64,000 nt of DNA from Kudoa neothunni (GCA_964304625.1 OZ199839.1:11884479-11948478), one strand, 5' to 3'. Positions 29,662-38,231 are shown, counted from the first letter of the stretch. Program-made: numbers and translations. Notes: generated from the letters alone by a model not told the origin.

Positions 29662-29873
29662 TGTATTGGCGATAAAAATATTTAATAATCTAGCAATCTT
29701 TATATTTTATATATGATTTAAATTGCGATTTTGCTTTAATTATAAAATATTGCTTTAATTTTATAAAACAACTCAACATTTATGAGTCTCCAACGAAGAT
29801 AATCACCAATAGGTAAAACTAACAACTATTAATTGTTTAGTTAGACAAAAGTGTATATTTTCTTATTTCCATA

Positions 29874-32692
29874 TTACAGATAGTGAACAGGATCTTTGGA
29901 TTTTCTTCTGAAAATAGCTAATAGTATCACCACTAACAAAAGGAGCATAATTGGTATCATCACATATATACTAAACATAATTCAATATGAATCCACGATT
30001 GACTTTTACATGTATCTGATGAACGGTCTATTTAAAATTAAAAAATACCAAAATTTCAACAAAAATTACGGATTTCTATTTTTTGCTGCTTCACGCTCAG
30101 CTTTTTCTTTGCTATCTATGTTATATTATTTCAAATTTAATACAGGTATTTCTATTAATTTTACTAAATTAATTAAAATTAGCAAAAACTTGGTAAAATT
30201 TAATATACCCTTCCTCTACTTTCCTTATTAGTATTGGAACTATATCAAATATCTCAATATTAGTATATTCACTTCTAAGATATTTTTCATCTACATATTA
30301 TTAATTTTACCCATTTTTAAATTAATTATACTAAAATCATAATTAAAAATATATAACTATATTTCAAATACCCCAATAATTTTTTGATTTTTGAATCTTT
30401 ATTCCATAAAATACAATTATTATAGGTTAAAATATACAATTAATTAAAATAATTTTATTTACATGGAATATCGTGGATTTGATAGGTTGAATGGTCCTTC
30501 ACTTTCACTGTTAATCTGTAATCCTTCTCCTTCAATAATCCATTAACATCAATGTTACATCCATTGGCTGAACATTCCTCTTCACCATTACACCAGGTAA
30601 CTGCAGGCTCTGGAATGCCACTTTTAGTCTTCTCATGCAGCATGAATGGACATTTATTATTGTCATTTTTACCTTCAAAGATTACGTCAATTTTCATGTC
30701 ACTTTCTTCGTCCAGCGTATAACTTATACGCGTAACAATATTAACTAAAATCCAATGTAATTAATTTTATAGTTCAGATATATTTGTTACGCGTGGTAAT
30801 ATCAATATTTTTTTCCTTGTAACCATCAGTTGGCTCGATGATTACTCCATAAGTTACCCCGAATTGTAAGTTTGTAATCTTGAACGAACTGTGACATTTG
30901 TTCTCACAAGCCCCTAATCCTTCACATGTAGCCATGAATTTTGGGGTCGATGCGCCCTTCTTTTTAAGATGAATTCTGCATATTGACGATGAATCCACAT
31001 TGGTAAATGGTGTCAATGTGGCAGTTACACCATTCACTGTATTCTCAATATCTGAATCTGTCAATACCGTCCCACCACCTAAAACTTTGTATTTTAAATG
31101 GTTTTCATTCATAGTTACTTGTTCTGAAAATCATTTTTTTGATGTAAGGCTCATTCACACCAAGATCAGTGATCGTCACTGAAATTAAATAATTTGTTCC
31201 AGCCGAAAGGCCGATAATGGAATATGACTCATCGCAACTGTTGTTGCAGTTTCCGTTATTACATATAGCACTAGTTTCAGTGAATAATGTATTGGCTCTT
31301 GATATTTTAATGGTGCATGTTTGGGAATTAATGCCTGTTTTAATGTTCTTATAATTATTAAGTCTGGAAAGTGTGACGCCAGTTTCAGTGATTTCGCTCA
31401 AATTAAAACCAAGGTCACCCCCTATTGAAATATAAATTATACGAACGTAATTATACATTACTTGTGAAATATTGCTTATATCCAGTGGAACCAAATCTTG
31501 GTTTTACAATCACTCCGACCTTTTGATAATTTCTGGATAAATTAATGATACCATCTTGACAAAGTTGATAGCACCCATCCGCCAAAGTCCCACAAGCATT
31601 CAATACACTGTCTATTTTATCGGGATCATCATCATCATCATCATTCACCTCATATACTTTAATGTGGCACATCTCATCGTTATAGGGGCCTGGAGAGAAA
31701 TTTAATTTTATTTGATTATTGTTATTTTCAATAGTTGATACAGAATAAATAATTTGAGATCTTATAGTAATAGTTTTATTAAGGAATGTATTGTTTGTGT
31801 AATAAAATAATGCAGGCCACAAAAGGCTGGATTCAATTTTATAATAATTTATATATCTATCGACCGGGAGATTAGTTGGTTTAGTTTCAACAGTGTCGGA
31901 ATAATTATTCACGTTTAATTCAGTTTCCTTAGATTGGCTAATGGAATTCTCATTTCCATCCACATACACCTTCCATCCTGTTATTGATGTTGTTTTGTAG
32001 GTAAATCGGATTTCATTCCCTTCGTGATTTAATTGATAAGTATTTTTTTGTATTGTTCCTAAATAATAATTTTAAAATAAATTTATTATATAATATGTTA
32101 TTTCTATTATTTATTAGATATAGGAATAGAATGGGTATTGAAATTACCCATTTGTATGACGAATACGTTCACATTTTTACAAGATTTTGCTTTATCGTCA
32201 GTTTCACCATAGCAAACTGATATATAACGATCAATTTTCGAATTTATATATCCAATCTCGATATCGGCTGATTCACATTCTGTCATGCAAAAGTCAGCAT
32301 CATTACCTTGAGCGCATGTTGGTTTGATAAAATCATGGTTATCTTCCAAGTTGGATATTTTTAAAGCGCATTTATTACCACTGGGAAATTCCGACAACGT
32401 TATGGAGAATTTGCCAATATCATTATTATTGTTCTGACCAAACTTTTGTTTTAGTTTTCCAAATCCAGACAAGGCTATCAGAATAATTTTAAAAAAATTA
32501 TAGGGTTTCTCGATCAAAAACGATAATACTGCAACCAAACTCGCAATTAGTGATTAAATTCGATGCTCTTAGTGTTTAAACTTAAATTCTAACTACTTAG
32601 AATCGTTTGTTTTAAAATATTAAAAATTACTTCAAATATATATTAATAACACAACAATTGACAAAAAATATGCATAACAGAGACGGACGCAT
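29874..32692 (-). CDS. Type I membrane protein, Cys-rich head + three 4-Cys FN3-like modules (paralog A)
   Basis: ORF-track pieces join through phase-1 GT-AG introns; TM IYVMIPIMLLLLVVILLAIF followed by RRKSKDPVHYL*; candidate signal exon MRPSLLCIFFVNCCVINIYL at 32692 whose splice junction is unresolved. Confidence 0.75.
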
Positions 32693-33361
32693 TTTAGTTT
32701 TAAAATAACCGCCATATTCTAAGTAATCATGCAATTATTAAATAAAAATGTTTTTAAAAGAAAAACTATATATGTAATGTAGAGATTATGATATTAAATT
32801 TATCTAGATGAATGCTCTAATATGATAACTTCATGTCGTGTTAATAATAGAACGAAATTTATAAATCGTACAATTAATATTTTAAATCAATTAAAATATT
32901 GTTTACTCTACATGAAAAATAATTTTTCCAAATCGGCGCCTAAAGATGAATTTAGTGAACTTAATCATGCTAATTTTAAAATATATGAATATATTTATAC
33001 TGAATATTTAAAGACTATGTTTAGTTATATTATATAAAAAATGAATTATGGATTAAAAATTTAATTTAATATAAATTAAAAATCAAATGTATTATTCGCA
33101 ACTTTGAAAAAATTTATATGAATAATAAATAAGTAATATTCTATAGACTTTTGCATATTATTTTATTATTATTATTTAAAGCTAACAAGTTTGAATTTTG
33201 ATATAATGTATTAATTAAATGAAATAACACATCATAAAATTAAAATAATGGTGGACCATCGTTGAAAATACTTGTAAGCGTGAAAGATTGAATTAGTATT
33301 CATTAAGTTATTTATTTCGTTTAAAAATTATACTTTATTTTTAAATGAAATATATTATTAA

Positions 33362-36300
33362 TTATGAATCGTCATCATGACATTGTTGAGAGCTTGTCCG
33401 TTTCAGACTCATACGACCTGGAACATTTCTATGATGGCAGCAATTTATAAAAACTGTATAATTTAACAAAATATTCAGGTAAATTCTGTCATTGATGAAG
33501 AATAAAAGTTTCTCTCACTGAGTAAAAGAAGACTTGTAGGAAAAGGGGCTTAAAACCCCAATTTTCGTTATTGAAAATATTAGATTACACAACTCAAAAA
33601 GCCTTGAAATTATGATTCTCGATTAAAATTTAAACAATATATTTCTACCACATACTTAACATCCCACGGTTCAATTAAAAATTTATTTACAATCAGGAAA
33701 TAATTAGTGATTAGATATAAGATCATCGATCCAAATGAACTAAATTTGATAATTTTCGAATTTTCCAATAAATCATTCGGTCTCACTACAATCATTTGTA
33801 TCAAAAATGTTAGGTAATTTTTTTTGATCATCTTTGTGGGAGATAATATTAGAATTAACTAGATATATAACCTTTAATTATTATTTTAGGAAAATTAATT
33901 CTTTTTGACTGATCTGTTATGTCGAGTTTGATTGCAAATGTGGCGTGATTGATAGAAAACCATCATACAATAATTATACCTGGAATCGCCATCTTAAATG
34001 GAGGAGATTTTCCACTTACGTAAATCATTAATCTGTAGTTATACTTTTTGTTATAGAAGGAAGATCCAAACTGAATATTGTCGCATTTTTTAATATTCCT
34101 ATTGTCTACACATCCAACACATGATTGCAATATTTTAGTGGGTGAATCTAAGTGATAATTAAATAAATAAGATTATTCTTATTACTGTCTCTTCCTTCAT
34201 GAACATAAAATTGATAATAACAATTTAAGTTATCAGCGTTGCTAATAGTTGTTTTTGATACTATTTTGAGATTACTTTTGGTCGATTCTGTCGAAATTTC
34301 AAATTCAATGGTTTCGCCATCTAATGATTGTTTATTTAATGTTACATACAAAATTTTACTTGTTTTCTTATTTTCCGAAATTACAGCATTGTAATTTCCA
34401 CTTGGTACCACTTTTATATCATATGTCCCACCAGAGTATAACCCCACAAGGGTGAACTCCTGATTACATTTTTTTACGCAAAATTCATTTCCTGCGCATA
34501 TAGCAGGATAATAATATAATTTATTATGTTCTCTCACATAAATGGTACATGTAATTGTTGTATCTGCAGGTTCAAGTGTAAATGTGAATCCATCAACGGT
34601 TGCAGTAACTGTTAAAGACCCACTAGTCAAGTTAGTTGTGTGAGCTAGAATAATATAAATATCTTTTATTACAGTTAAATTATATACTTATTTTATGATA
34701 AAAGTATTTTCTTGGTGAATAATGCGGTATACCGGTTATTTCAACCATAATATCATTGGGTACATCAGTTGGGTTAGCTGGTATATCCATTTTTGCAAAG
34801 TTACAATTTTCTGAATCACTAACAGTTTTTCTTCCATTCTCTTTAACCAATGGAGCATATGCGTTCCACATTTGCAGAGAACAAGTTGGTTGTGTTGAAC
34901 CAGTTATAGCTCCTCCATTTTCATCTTTGTTATTTGCAGAGATATCAATTTTAATTTTATTATCAGACGCAGTAGCAGAAACGTCATTCCCATGTTTCAC
35001 TAAAATTCTTAATTATATTTTCTTGAATATAAACAATTACGTATGTAAATATTGTTTTGATAACCAATAGTGGGCTCCATCCCTAATTTGAGAACACGCA
35101 ATTTTACTGCTTTCACACCTGGAATATTGTCAAACGTAACATTACTACACAGACTGTAGACACAATTTTTATTATTCTCACAAACGTTTGAAAAAAATCT
35201 ATTTTGAGATGACGCTGTGGCATCTATCCATTCAAATGTGCATATGTTAAATGGTTCTTCGTTAACCAGCTTAACTGTTAGGTTATTCTTTGTTTCATCT
35301 ACAGCTAATTCAAAATAAAACCTGCTAAAAATTGGTGCAGTATTTTCAACAAAAGTATTATCATAAAAATAATGAAAGTCGACATGTTTTGGGCAACTTA
35401 TAAAATAATCTTCAACCAACTCATCGAATCGAATTGAGTAACTTCCAAATATACACGGTTGTTGATCTTGAGATTCCTCGAAAAGATTCATTTTATGTCC
35501 ATCCTTAAATCCTTCGCAATTTAGAGAACACTTTTTCGTTCCAAATTTTATTTGATCTTCATGCAATGTTGCTATATGCGGAATCTCCTCAAAATAATCT
35601 TAACAACCTTAAATTTATTATCCATTTTAGTTTTACCCGTGCCGTATGAATAGACTTTTCCCACATAATACATACCATGTACAGTGACTTGATTTAATTT
35701 TGTTGTTAATTTGGATAAAAAAAGCTCGAAATCTTTCTTGTAATAACGCTCTATGATTTCTGTCAAATCGCGTTCAAATATAACTCCATCGTTCCCTCTA
35801 GATTTGCCGGCTATTCCATAATCAACATGAAGATATCTAACGGAAATATAATTCAGTTTGTCTTCACTACTAAGATCAATAATCGATTCCAATTCATCAA
35901 ATTTTTCACAAATTTCCTCAATTTTATCTTTATTTTCGCCAGCATCTTCATATACAGATGATTTGGAATTAAATTTTTTTATCGAACATACAAAGCTTGA
36001 GATATCTAATAAATCACCCGACAATTTCACTTTGTATTTATCTAGTGTTTTGTCATATTTTAGATTCATATAATCCATTTTCACCTCCATATCCCCTAGA
36101 ATAATCAATTCTGGATTATATATTTATTTAATTACTTGTGATTATTAATTTCACTGGTTTTGCGACATTTTCATTAATAATTATTAATTCGTATACTATT
36201 GAAACATCTATAGTAGTCCATGAAATATCAAGTGTGGGAGTCCCCGATGATGTTTGTACAGCAGGATCACATACACTATTTAAACAGTCAAAAATAATTC

Positions 36301-38231
36301 TTTTAGATTCTTGCTCCAAAAGAATATATCTCCATAAACTTCCAAAAGAACCTAGCGTTGTAGGCGTGGTGGCGATGATTTTCATTGCATTAACATCTTC
36401 TGTTTTTTTTACGGTTACGACGATCCCATTAGCTATTAAAAATAATTATTATGCTATTACTCAAAAAACTACTGGAAATAGTTGAGCTAGTAGCACAAGT
36501 GAAATCGCCAGAGCAAACAATTATCTTATAGCTAGTTTTGGGATCAAGATTTACGATTTCAAAAGGGCTAGAACAGGCATCTGAACAAAAAATTTTGTTA
36601 TTGTCTTTCTCGCAGGTTGCAGGAAACTTTGCTGAATCGTCTCCGTCAAGCGAATAATATAATTCGCAAGTAGCAGCATTATTAGTTCCATCATCAAATA
36701 CGTTGGTCGGAGTCAGTGATAGTTTTGTATTATCGGCATTAACGGCAGATGGTGTGATTTGTCCTCCATTCTTAAAATCACTTCCTAATTAATTATTAAA
36801 TAATTTTTTAATATTAGTTATTACCTTTAGTTTTGAAGAAAATATATCTGTGATAATGTTTCACTTCAAAAGAATCTATAGTTTTTAATCCGGCTATTTT
36901 CATCCTTAGGACGTATTCAGTTAACGGTGAAAGTCCTGATATAGTCTTAGAAACGAAATTTTTGCACTCACCATTACATGTTGCATCTTCTCCAGTGCTT
37001 TCAATTCCAAAAAATTTTGGAATAATTTTCATTTCTGCAATTTTTGCTTCACTTTCGACTATGTCATCTTCATTTTTATTTAAACTTGTTAAATCTATCG
37101 TTACTTCGCTATTATTATCTTTATCGACAACGTGAGGTTGATTACTGCCAACTAAAAACTTAATTAAAAGTATAATGAAATTAAATAAATACATGTCACA
37201 GTTTGAATGAATTCTTTTGAAGTGGATTGAATGATTGATTTAACAAGTACTTGAGCAAATTTCAAATCACTATCATTTAACAATGTCGCTTTGTAGCAAG
37301 GTTGTAGGCATGGTCCAGCTTTATTCATATCTGAACAATACGAAGAAAAGTGCGAATCATTAATTTCCTTTATACCAAAGTAACACAACCTTGATGGTTC
37401 CGGGTTCTGTAATTGTATTGTGTAATAATATTTTGAATTAACATTTTGTTTTGCTCCAGATGCAATAAACCAATCTTCAGTTGGTTTTTTAGGATTGAGA
37501 AATATTTCGGGAGATTTATCGTTAAATTCAACAATATATTTTGGTTTATATGATTTTGATTTAAGTTTCACCGATGTATCAGTGTAAAATAATGTGTTCA
37601 CTGCCTGACTTGTTTCAATAACAGAGTTTTCTTTGACAGTTAAACTCATATTGTTTTTACTTTTAACTTTAACTGTAAATTCATCGTTTTCCTTTTCCAC
37701 TCCAAAAATAGTTTTTATTAAAATGTCTATAATAATATCTAGTGGTTTTATATACACTAAGATTTAAATACCCTCGAATGAAAAAAACTCTTTTAGTAGA
37801 GCACTTTTTTACATCACCGTCATTTTTCCCTTGACACCATCTTAAATATTTAATTTTTTTAAATTCATCCCCACTAAACTTCAATTCTATTTTCTTGCAC
37901 TCGTAAATGCACATTTTTGAAATTTGGTCATCATCGGCACCTTCTATATCCGTAGTGCACGTAGGAATGTTTTTAAGCGTCAACTCGTTTTTATCGTAAA
38001 ATTGGAGACCACATTTTTTGTTACTATTTTCAATATTGTATCCCGAAATGAAAAGACTATATCTTTCTGATGTTTGCGAAAAATGATATTTTATCATGTT
38101 ATTATCAATTTCCGACGTAAAAACACATTTTCCAAAGAAAACTAAAAATGGTTCATTATAGAAATACATTGAAAAATACTAGAAAAATATAAAAGGTGTA
38201 TTGATTGGAAATTTCTCCATTTCCACGACAT
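33362..38231 (-). CDS. Larger surface protein, same head + about 7-8 Cys/FN3-like modules (paralog B)
   Basis: Signal exon MSWKWRNFQSIHLLYFS; at least ten consecutive exons linked by phase-1 introns without stops; GLSPLTEY, NLDPKTSY and GLYSGGTY tyrosine-corner motifs; 3' exons (33362-33900) uncertain. Confidence 0.78.

What the first reader, a model, noticed from the sequence alone, without database searches (positions are those of the whole stretch)
29874..38231. Tandem paralogous surface proteins built from an unrecognised 4-Cys FN3-like module
Seen: a ~95-105 aa unit recurs in both genes with the pattern C-x(15-20)-C-x(4-8)-C-x(3-4)-C then F/Y-x-I-x-G/N-L-x3-T-x-Y. Examples are TCTIKI..SAICNNGNCNNSCDESYSIIGLSAGTNY, ICRIHL..MATCEGLGACENKCHSSFKITNLQFGVTY, TCELYY..PATCEKDNNKIFCSDACSSPFEIVNLDPKTSY and TCTIYV..PAICAGNEFCVKKCNQEFTLVGLYSGGTY. 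Established: L-x-P-x-T-x-Y is the FN3 tyrosine-corner signature, and canonical FN3 usually lacks disulfides and has a strand-B Trp that is absent here. Units differ at most non-Cys positions, and paralog A ends in a TM plus 11-aa tail with no signalling domain. Inference: a lineage-specific, fast-evolving adhesin or variant surface antigen family with a disulfide-stapled loop inserted into an FN3 sandwich.
Basis: partly seen in the sequence, partly recalled or inferred. Interest (0 to 1): 0.8.

Follow-up and report, generated by a model that had tools for sequence, protein, structure and literature searches.

The report
Kudoa giant FN3-like surface protein
The two supposed neighbouring genes are the front and back halves of one roughly 1,900-residue membrane protein made of fibronectin-III-like modules, most of them with four cysteines; it is one of about 60 similar genes in the tuna parasite Kudoa neothunni, and I found the family described in no paper.

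Summary
A module of about 100 residues with the pattern C-x(12-26)-C-x(3-16)-C-x(3-4)-C recurs in 10 exons, against 0.22 expected by shuffling. An eleventh copy is split over two exons. A model of one module (pLDDT 84) matches only FN3 domains (Z 10.4).

"Tandem paralogous genes" is not supported. In at least 12 other loci of this genome and in two contigs from other public samples, the exons of "gene B" run straight into those of "gene A", separated by a short phase-1 intron. In the window and its three sister copies that intron has grown to 1,505 nt through repeat DNA. Both splice sites are kept, and "gene A" has no conserved start codon.

The product is a type I membrane protein: signal peptide, about 17 beta-sandwich modules, transmembrane helix and an 11-residue tail. 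The modules look like three five-module super-repeats. The family has about 60 genes. Only unnamed metagenomic ORFs are relatives elsewhere.

The window copy has one possible frameshift, a T7 run at 37781-37787.

Not shown: transcription, surface location, adhesion and antigenic variation.

This scan had already noted FN3-like surface-protein families on other DNA of this genome.

The parts
38180..38231 (-). Exon 1: ATG and most of a signal-peptide-like N-terminus (MSWKWRNFQSIHLLYFS), ending in phase 1
   Evidence: Sequence read directly. The 38-nt intron 38142-38179 (GTATTT...TTTTAG) joins it in frame to FFGKCVFTSEIDNN. A hydrophobic N-terminus before [ST]x[ED]IDNN is also seen in paralog L044.
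37772..38141 (-). Exon B1: 4-Cys module, position 1 of super-repeat 1, with an extra Cys pair near its end
   Evidence: E 1.5e-18 with a profile built from paralogs only. hhalign B1~A1 99%.
37781..37787 (-). T7 run; sister copies have T6. It puts the canonical donor (GT at 37770-37771) in phase 2, out of frame with the conserved acceptors
   Evidence: Alignment A5; coordinates.
37193..37738 (-). Exon B2 (start 37738 or 37726): variable N-terminal half plus the best-conserved 4-Cys module of the family
   Evidence: Alignment A4: 37 invariant columns among 19 paralogs, all in the second half. 72 matches in the genome. The AF2 model of this exon is all-beta but unreliable, pLDDT 56.
36825..37151 (-). 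Exon B3: module with only C3 and C4
   Evidence: hhalign B3~A3 87% and B3~B8 67%.
36473..36784 (-). Exon B4: 4-Cys module used for the structure model
   Evidence: AF2 pLDDT 84, pTM 0.76. FN3 matches.
36136..36432 (-). Exon B5: 98-aa module with two Cys, not matched by the 4-Cys profile
   Evidence: Its weak link to B10 is hhalign E 0.0019.
35637..36095 (-). Exon B6: least conserved exon (35% mean identity among paralogs), keeps C1 and C2
35041..35571 (-). Exon B7: Cys-rich N-terminal half plus a 4-Cys module; best-conserved long exon (66% mean identity)
   Evidence: hhalign B2~B7 81%.
34688..34999 (-). Exon B8: module with C1 and C2 only
34186..34644 (-). Exon B9: one 4-Cys module plus the first half (C1) of the next module
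   Evidence: hhalign B4~B9 99.6% and B9~A4 99.6%.
33980..34147 (-). Exon B10: second half (C2-C4) of the split module, ending CCAG|GT in phase 1
32475..33979 (-). 1,505-nt spacer, read as an intron swollen by old dispersed repeats. The canonical intron at this place is about 42-50 nt
   Evidence: The donor GTATAA and acceptor GATAG|CC sit at the canonical places and keep the frame. The spacer matches seven unrelated places of the genome at 65-70%. It is shared by the three sister copies. Just upstream of the acceptor the sister copies differ by indels that are not multiples of three.
32148..32474 (-). Exon A1: 4-Cys module, position 1 of super-repeat 3
31462..32058 (-). Exon A2: Cys-free N-terminal half plus a 4-Cys module
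   Evidence: P0016, from another sample, is this exon type.
31119..31421 (-).
30791..31078 (-). Exon A4: 4-Cys module
30463..30744 (-). Exon A5: 4-Cys module, ending in phase 1
30209..30290 (-). Exon X1: short stalk exon conserved in paralogs (EKYLRSEYTNIE...VEEG)
   Evidence: tblastx matches to seven distant paralogs at 39-63% identity; 70% mean identity; junctions.
30070..30111 (-). Exon X2: short stalk exon (KEKAEREAAKNRN)
29874..29970 (-). Last exon: TM helix, 11-residue basic tail RRKSKDPVHYL and stop codon
   Evidence: Paralogs share ...MIPI..LLV.IG..Y[RK][RK]...D..Y[DE]L-COOH.

Best explanation
Positions 29874-38231 hold one gene, not two. It belongs to a family of about 60 genes in Kudoa neothunni and encodes a type I membrane protein of roughly 1,900 residues. 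The parts in order are a signal peptide, about 17 beta-sandwich modules (one per phase-1 exon as a rule), a short stalk, one TM helix, and an 11-residue basic tail with a family-conserved C-terminal motif. Eleven modules are a 4-Cys variant of the FN3 fold. C1 sits at the start of strand C and C2 after strand C'. C3-x3-C4 lies in an added small hairpin in the C'-E loop, at the BC/FG-loop pole. Which Cys are lost together argues for C1-C2 and C3-C4 disulfides. The modules appear to form three five-module super-repeats (B1-5, B6-10, A1-5). By inference, the protein stands as a long, disulfide-stiffened rod on the parasite's surface and serves adhesion or recognition, either parasite to host or parasite cell to parasite cell. 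It has no enzymatic or signalling domain, and the conserved tail would serve sorting or anchoring. Shown here: gene structure, fold, family and architecture. Inferred: disulfide pairing, super-repeat, surface location and adhesive role.
For: One gene: the order B1..B10-A1..A5-X1-(X2)-TM is collinear in at least 12 other loci. B10 and A1 are joined there by a 42-50-nt phase-1 intron, and in one locus they share an ORF. The same adjacency is seen in two foreign contigs. The window keeps both splice sites around a 1,505-nt spacer that matches dispersed repeats. The ATG of 'gene A' is TTG or absent in sister copies, and the sequence there has frame-breaking indels. 'Gene B' has no TM. Fold: AF2 pLDDT 84. 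All top PDB matches are FN3, with VIA Z 10.4, rmsd 2.5 A over 89 of 103 residues, and Foldseek E 1e-3. ESM Atlas TM is 0.63-0.70. The family profile hits classical multi-FN3 proteins at profile positions 73-108. Ten of 140 modules hit Pfam fn3 at E<=0.01. Cys pairing: 120 of 140 modules are CCCC and 16 are --CC; B6 and B8 keep only C1 and C2. Super-repeat: hhalign B1~A1 99%, B4~B9~A4 99%, B3~A3 87%, B3~B8 67%, B2~B7 81%. Family size: 72 matches of the B2 exon, about 54 of them full-length and stop-free; 959 module candidates. Membrane topology: hydrophobic N-terminus, mostly even Cys counts per module, 14 N-x-S/T sequons, TM plus basic stop-transfer.
Against: There is no RNA evidence. The three RNA runs laid on the stretch gave one read each in two runs and none in the third, so they are no test. 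A 1.5-kb intron is unusual where the median intron is 49 bp (PMC12239612). The window copy has a +1 shift in a T7 run, which makes the canonical B1-B2 splice out of frame, so this copy may be damaged or the assembly wrong there. Disulfide pairing and module count rest on one confident single-module model and on alignments. The model of exon B2 was unreliable, pLDDT 56. Positions 2 and 5 of the super-repeat are weakly supported (B2~A2 1%, B5~B10 14%). Nothing tested here bears on localisation or ligand.
Confidence: 0.6

Rival explanations
1. Two separate genes: a secreted protein (B, ending ...KMAIPGIIIV) and a membrane-anchored protein (A). The split would have come from repeat DNA inserted into the former B10-A1 intron in the ancestor of the four sister copies.
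For: The spacer is 1,505 nt, against a median intron of 49 bp. The B10 reading frame meets a stop five codons after the donor. The window has an ATG-led hydrophobic ORF, MRPSLLCIFFVNCC..., upstream of A1.
Against: That ATG is TTG in the two C2 sister copies and absent in the C3 copy. The stretch between it and A1 has 1- and 2-nt indels among copies. The canonical acceptor and the first residues of A1 are exactly conserved. A1 has no internal Met followed by a signal peptide. The A exons are open, with dN/dS 0.35-0.63 for A1, A2 and A5 against the C3 copy, so they are expressed somehow.
Confidence: 0.2
2. The window copy is a recently disabled pseudogene of an otherwise functional family. It would be frameshifted at the T7 run, with an intron bloated by repeats.
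For: A +1 shift relative to the three sister copies at 37781-37787 makes the canonical B1-B2 junction out of frame, with a stop 14 codons later. About 8-10 of the roughly 62 B2-type loci carry stops, so the family does shed copies.
Against: All other exons are open and the other 17 junctions are in frame. The difference is a single base in a homopolymer of a low-coverage HiFi assembly (PMC12239612). Two in-frame alternative splice routes exist.
Confidence: 0.2
3. The family is a variant-surface-antigen system. Constant modules (B1, B2, B7) would carry a diversifying cassette (B3-B6) that is exchanged among copies to evade the fish immune response.
For: Between sister copies, amino-acid identity is 50-78% in B3-B6 and 82-92% in B1, B2, B7 and B8. 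dN/dS is 0.8-1.1 in B5 and B6, and dS is patchy from 0 to 1.2, which suggests conversion tracts. There are about 60 clustered copies.
Against: No exon shows dN/dS clearly above 1 with adequate counts; the two highest values rest on dS of 0.05-0.07. Paralogs average about 50% identity over every exon and keep one fixed architecture, which looks old and stable rather than rapidly shuffled. Nothing is known about one-at-a-time expression. Earlier follow-ups on related loci of this genome also found conversion but no selection.
Confidence: 0.1
4. Structural protein of the spore, in the valve or suture surface or a cell-cell junction of sporoblasts, rather than a host-facing adhesin. The disulfides would then serve mechanical hardening.
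For: The ectodomain is Cys-rich, rod-like and repetitive. The cytoplasmic motif is conserved, which suits anchoring. Myxozoan spores are built from tightly joined valve cells (general knowledge).
Against: No data. Sixty divergent paralogs are more than a purely structural role would seem to need.
Confidence: 0.15

Closest known systems
Canonical FN3 domains of metazoan cell-surface and muscle proteins (titin Fn3-56 8oq9_A, contactin-3 7mrm_A and 5i99_A, PTP-delta, DSCAM)
   Same: Seven-strand sandwich over the whole module: Z 10.4-8.4, rmsd 2.3-2.9 A over 83-94 of 103 residues. An E-F 'tyrosine corner'-like motif is present. One domain per phase-1 exon. The family profile matches bona fide FN3 repeats.
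   Different: Window modules stay below Pfam's fn3 threshold; the best is 12.5 bits against a cut-off of 25. The strand-B Trp is replaced by Leu. Four conserved Cys and an added hairpin sit between C' and E. Foldseek E reaches only 1e-3, with global TM 0.5.
Titin A-band FN3/Ig super-repeats
   Same: A long string of beta-sandwich modules in which modules at the same position of successive multi-module units resemble each other more than their neighbours do.
   Different: Titin is intracellular and disulfide-free, with 7- and 11-domain units. Here there are three units of five, in an extracellular, Cys-bearing, membrane-anchored protein. Support for positions 2 and 5 is weak.
Class I cytokine receptor homology module (four conserved Cys in the first FN3, WSxWS in the second)
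   Same: An FN3 fold with two conserved disulfides. Cytokine receptors appear among the lower structural matches.
   Different: There is no WSxWS anywhere. The Cys positions differ: here they lie at the start of C, after C', and in a C'-E hairpin with C-x3-C. There is no paired-domain elbow architecture and no box motifs in the 11-residue tail.
Other FN3-like surface-protein families of the same genome noted earlier in this scan (s1-701596, s1-711974, s1-690105, s1-701629)
   Same: Same organism, same kind of module, type I membrane architecture, clustered paralogs and patchy divergence.
   Different: I did not compare sequences with those loci. My count for this architecture is about 60 genes, while they report 200 or more, so this is probably one subfamily of a larger module superfamily.

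Membership tests
FN3 domain (Pfam PF00041 and its clan) | Seven-strand beta-sandwich with FN3 topology | tested here: met
   AF2 model with pLDDT 84. All 50 best PDB representatives are FN3, Z 10.4-8.4. Foldseek top hits are all FN3. ESM Atlas TM 0.63-0.70.
FN3 domain (Pfam PF00041 and its clan) | Score at or above Pfam's gathering cut-off (25 bits) | tested here: not met
   Window exons: the best fn3 score is 12.5 bits, E 0.17 (A3); Fn3_VIN3 gives 13.5 bits (B3). Among 140 family modules, 10 reach E<=0.01, the best 8e-6.
FN3 domain (Pfam PF00041 and its clan) | Profile-level sequence similarity to accepted FN3 proteins | tested here: met
   The family profile hits multi-FN3 proteins (Pfam fn3 E 1e-41 to 1e-138) at E down to 7.8e-28, summed over repeats. 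Only profile positions 73-108, strands E to G, are matched.
FN3 domain (Pfam PF00041 and its clan) | Conserved Trp in strand B and Tyr corner in the E-F region | tested here: inconclusive
   The Tyr-corner-like motif I-x-x-L-x5-Y-x3-V is present in the consensus. The strand-B position is Leu, not Trp.
Class I cytokine receptor homology domain | WSxWS motif and the receptor-type pattern of four Cys | tested here: not met
   No WS.WS in any exon. The Cys spacing and strand positions differ.
Receptor-type protein tyrosine phosphatase, or another signalling receptor with an FN3 ectodomain | Cytoplasmic catalytic or signalling domain | tested here: not met
   The tail is 11 residues, RRKSKDPVHYL, followed by a stop. 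No Pfam domain in any exon.
Variant surface antigen systems (functional class) | Large paralog family with a surface-exposed region under diversifying selection | tested here: inconclusive
   There are about 60 copies. B3-B6 are more diverged between sister copies, with dN/dS up to about 1, but counts are small and dS is mosaic.
Variant surface antigen systems (functional class) | Mutually exclusive or switching expression | not testable with these tools
   No usable RNA data. The RNA runs held almost no reads of the organism.

The most novel reading that the evidence does not exclude
The family is the myxozoan's host-interface recognition or evasion system. Each of about 60 genes would display a conserved scaffold (B1, B2, B7 and the A half) with a cassette (B3-B6) diversified by gene conversion between clustered copies. 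The 4-Cys knob at the BC/FG pole of each FN3-like module would be the variable contact surface. This would be a cnidarian-derived, FN3-based analogue of protozoan variant surface proteins.
Probability: 0.12. Interest if true: 0.8.

Novelty: new variant of a known kind. Interest (0 to 1): 0.45.

Why it matters
Myxozoans are economically important fish parasites. K. neothunni is linked to post-harvest softening of tuna muscle. Almost nothing is known about the molecules on their surfaces. A family of about 60 giant membrane proteins makes up roughly 1% of a gene set of about 5,300. It would be a prime candidate for the host-parasite interface, for diagnostics and for vaccine antigens. It also shows how a conventional metazoan FN3 domain was reshaped into a disulfide-stapled form in a very fast-evolving lineage. 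The corrected gene model, one gene rather than two, matters for annotating this genome and for reading similar "gene pairs" elsewhere in it.

Tried and rejected
- RNA evidence. One search for runs found three raw-read RNA runs under the same species label. Laid on 29860-35859, two runs gave one read each and the third none, so they are no test of transcription.
- Pfam on every exon found nothing above threshold.
- Rfam on the region found nothing.
- Terminal inverted or direct repeats in the 1.5-kb spacer: nothing convincing, so the kind of repeat there is unknown.
- The AF2 model of exon B2 (187 aa, 19 paralogs) had pLDDT 56 and pTM 0.44. I did not use it for fold searches.
Comparisons with sister copies therefore rest on partial loci L007-L020, L041, L042 and L048.
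- A separate start for "gene A" (MRPSLLC...) was considered and rejected because it is not conserved.
- A cytokine-receptor-like origin was rejected: no WSxWS and a different Cys pattern.
- Five literature searches (Kudoa gene families, K. neothunni, myxozoa with fibronectin type III, sample accessions, Kudoa proteomics) found no description of the family.
- The sample accessions of the foreign contigs appear in none of the papers searched, so their organisms remain unnamed.
- Joined (spliced) protein. Full-length searches and multi-module models were therefore left out.


Full report
**Organism.**
- The window is G000:C2:11884479-11948478 of a 40,260,978-base assembly in four contigs of 17,154,348, 12,040,071 and 11,048,340 bases; the remainder is 18,219 bases.
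- The paper on Kudoa genomes recovered from host data (PMC12239612) reports for K. neothunni a 40.2-Mb assembly with N50 12.0 Mb and three chromosomes.
- It also reports an 18,219-bp mitochondrial contig, 30.4% GC and a median intron of 49 bp.
- The figures agree, so I accept the name that earlier notes of this scan gave.
- The paper says nothing about this family. It notes that very few host RNA reads mapped to the parasite.

**Observation.**
- On the minus strand of 29874-38231 lies a chain of open exons separated by GTA...TAG introns of about 40 nt, nearly all in phase 1.
- The pattern C-x(12-26)-C-x(3-16)-C-x(3-4)-C occurs once in each of ten exons. Shuffling gives 0.22 on average and at most 3 in 2000 trials. 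An eleventh copy is split over exons B9 and B10.
- A profile built only from family members outside the window finds all eleven window modules at E 1e-16 to 1e-26.
- Profiles built from one module type at a time, from paralogs only, find other types. The B4 profile finds A4 at 3e-13 and B9 at 3e-12. The A4 profile finds B9 at 8e-20. The A3 profile finds A4 at 1e-10.

**Fold.**
- I aligned 140 modules from the window and 20 other stretches of the genome (A3) and modelled exon B4. The result was pLDDT 84 and pTM 0.76.
- Foldseek against the PDB returns only FN3 domains at the top, with E 1e-3.
- The search of 48,161 PDB representatives that does not lean on Foldseek returns FN3 domains in all 50 rows. 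The best are titin Fn3-56 and the contactins, at Z 10.4 and rmsd 2.5-2.9 A over 89-93 of 103 residues.
- The ESM Atlas gives TM 0.63-0.70 to FN3 clusters. The language-model search gives FN3 clusters at 0.91-0.93, together with unnamed and phage Ig-like clusters.
- By the model's strand list, C1 opens strand C and C2 follows strand C'. C3 and C4 lie in a small extra hairpin before strand E.
- I could not read coordinates, so disulfide pairs are inferred. Of 140 modules, 120 have all four Cys and 16 lack C1 and C2 together. Module types B6 and B8 keep only C1 and C2. That argues for C1-C2 and C3-C4.
- Window modules do not reach Pfam's fn3 cut-off. Ten of the 140 family modules reach E<=0.01.

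**One gene, not two.**
- I mapped the window's exons on 20 other 10-kb stretches. Every locus long enough shows the same order, B1 to B10, then A1 to A5, a short stalk exon and the TM exon, within about 6.7 kb.
- At the B10-A1 junction, the canonical loci have ...IPG|GTA..(42-50 nt)..TAG|C.., a phase-1 intron. The reading frame changes across it in most loci, so the two sides must be spliced together. In L044 both sides lie in one ORF.
- Two contigs from other public samples show B10 and A1 66 and 75 nt apart. L063 is 53-65% identical to the window exons and L061 is 27-44% identical.
- In the window, the donor (CCAG|GTATAA, last exon base 33980) and the acceptor (GATAG|CC, first exon base 32474) stand at the canonical places and keep the frame. 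Between them lie 1,505 nt.
- That spacer is shared by three sister copies at C2:6.21 Mb, C2:6.25 Mb and C3:9.50 Mb. It matches seven unrelated places of the genome at 65-70% identity, so it is old repeat DNA.
- The ATG that could start a separate "gene A" is TTG in two sisters and absent in the third. The sequence between it and the acceptor differs among copies by 1- and 2-nt indels, while the acceptor itself is identical in all four.
- "Gene B" has no TM segment.
- The 3' end was completed from conservation. It consists of two short stalk exons (30290-30209 and 30111-30070) and the TM exon (29970-29874), all in frame.

**A blemish in the window copy.**
- The window has a T7 run at 37781-37787 where the sisters have T6.
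- With T7 the canonical donor falls in phase 2, while both conserved acceptors need phase 1. The canonical B1-B2 splice is therefore out of frame in the window.
- This may be a homopolymer error, a recent lesion, or something bypassed by another splice site.

**Internal plan.**
- Profile-profile comparison of exon-type alignments gives B1~A1 99%, B4~B9 99.6%, B9~A4 99.6% and B4~A4 99.4%. It also gives B3~A3 87%, B3~B8 67% and B2~B7 81%.
- The collinear matches fit three five-module super-repeats: B1-5, B6-10 and A1-5.
- Positions 2 and 5 are weakly supported. B6 is too diverged to place.
- This is the grain of truth in "paralogous": the A half is an old internal repeat of part of the B half.

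**Family.**
- The B2 exon, one per gene, has 72 matches at about 62 loci on all three chromosomes. About 54 are full-length and stop-free.
- The 4-Cys module has 959 first-look candidates, and all 150 that were scored reach E<=4e-9.
- Paralogs average 35-70% identity per exon. B7, B10 and X1 are best conserved and B6 least.
- The 4-Cys module of B2 has 37 invariant columns among 19 paralogs.
- The tail motif Y[RK][RK]xxxDxxY[DE]L-COOH is shared across paralogs.
- Against the sister copies, dN/dS per exon runs from 0.15 to 2.08. The highest values rest on very few synonymous changes. dS varies from 0 to 1.2 between neighbouring exons, which points to gene conversion rather than uniform divergence.
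- Positive selection is not shown.

**Outside the genome.**
- The family profile was run against 1.84 billion representative proteins. It gave 92 hits at E<=1e-3 and none at E<=1e-30.
- The long hits are ordinary multi-FN3 proteins matched only over strands E to G.
- The short hits are exon-sized ORFs with the 4-Cys pattern. All are unnamed singletons from ENA or Logan assemblies.
- P0016 is at most 61% identical to anything in this genome, so it comes from another species.
- P0054 matches other loci of this genome, so further families use the module.

**Function.**
- Shown: architecture, fold and family.
- Inferred: a long disulfide-stiffened rod on the parasite surface, serving adhesion or recognition.
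- Not shown: transcription, localisation, ligand and antigenic variation.

All searches and models were done exon by exon.

Noticed in passing
window 37781-37787 (minus strand): T7 homopolymer where the three sister copies have T6. It throws the canonical B1-B2 splice out of frame in this copy only. This may be an assembly error or a fresh lesion.
   Followed up: partly
window 29874-38231, exon types B1-B10 and A1-A5: Position-wise similarity (B1~A1, B2~B7, B3~B8~A3, B4~B9~A4) suggests three five-module super-repeats, reminiscent of titin's domain super-repeats.
   Followed up: partly
L063:4-1899 (ENA ERZ28624939) and L061:10-2477 (Logan SRR33849685): Contigs from other public samples carry the same exon order at 53-65% and 27-44% identity, so the family exists in at least two other organisms that I could not name.
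   Followed up: partly
G000 C2:11305800, C1:1223034, C1:697366, C2:3552784, C3:1238083; L062 (Logan SRR31175926, GC 17%): Four-Cys FN3-like modules also occur in loci with no B2-type exon nearby, and in a very AT-rich foreign contig. The module is used by further gene families.
   Followed up: no
window 29874-29970 and the TM exons of L043, L044, L046, L049, L053-L055, L059: The 11-12-residue cytoplasmic tail ends in a conserved Y[DE]L-COOH after a dibasic stop-transfer. It may be a sorting or PDZ-type anchoring motif.
   Followed up: no
window 32475-33979: The swollen intron consists of two blocks. Each matches three or four unrelated places of the genome at 65-70% identity. They are old dispersed repeats of unknown type, without clear terminal repeats.
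   Followed up: partly
window 37194-37493 (second half of exon B2): This one 4-Cys module is far more conserved than the rest of the protein: LQNPxPS..CYFGIK.IN.S.FSS.CS....AGPC.QPC..ATL is invariant in 19 paralogs. It lacks the usual E-F motif, so it may hold the family's common binding or assembly site.
   Followed up: partly
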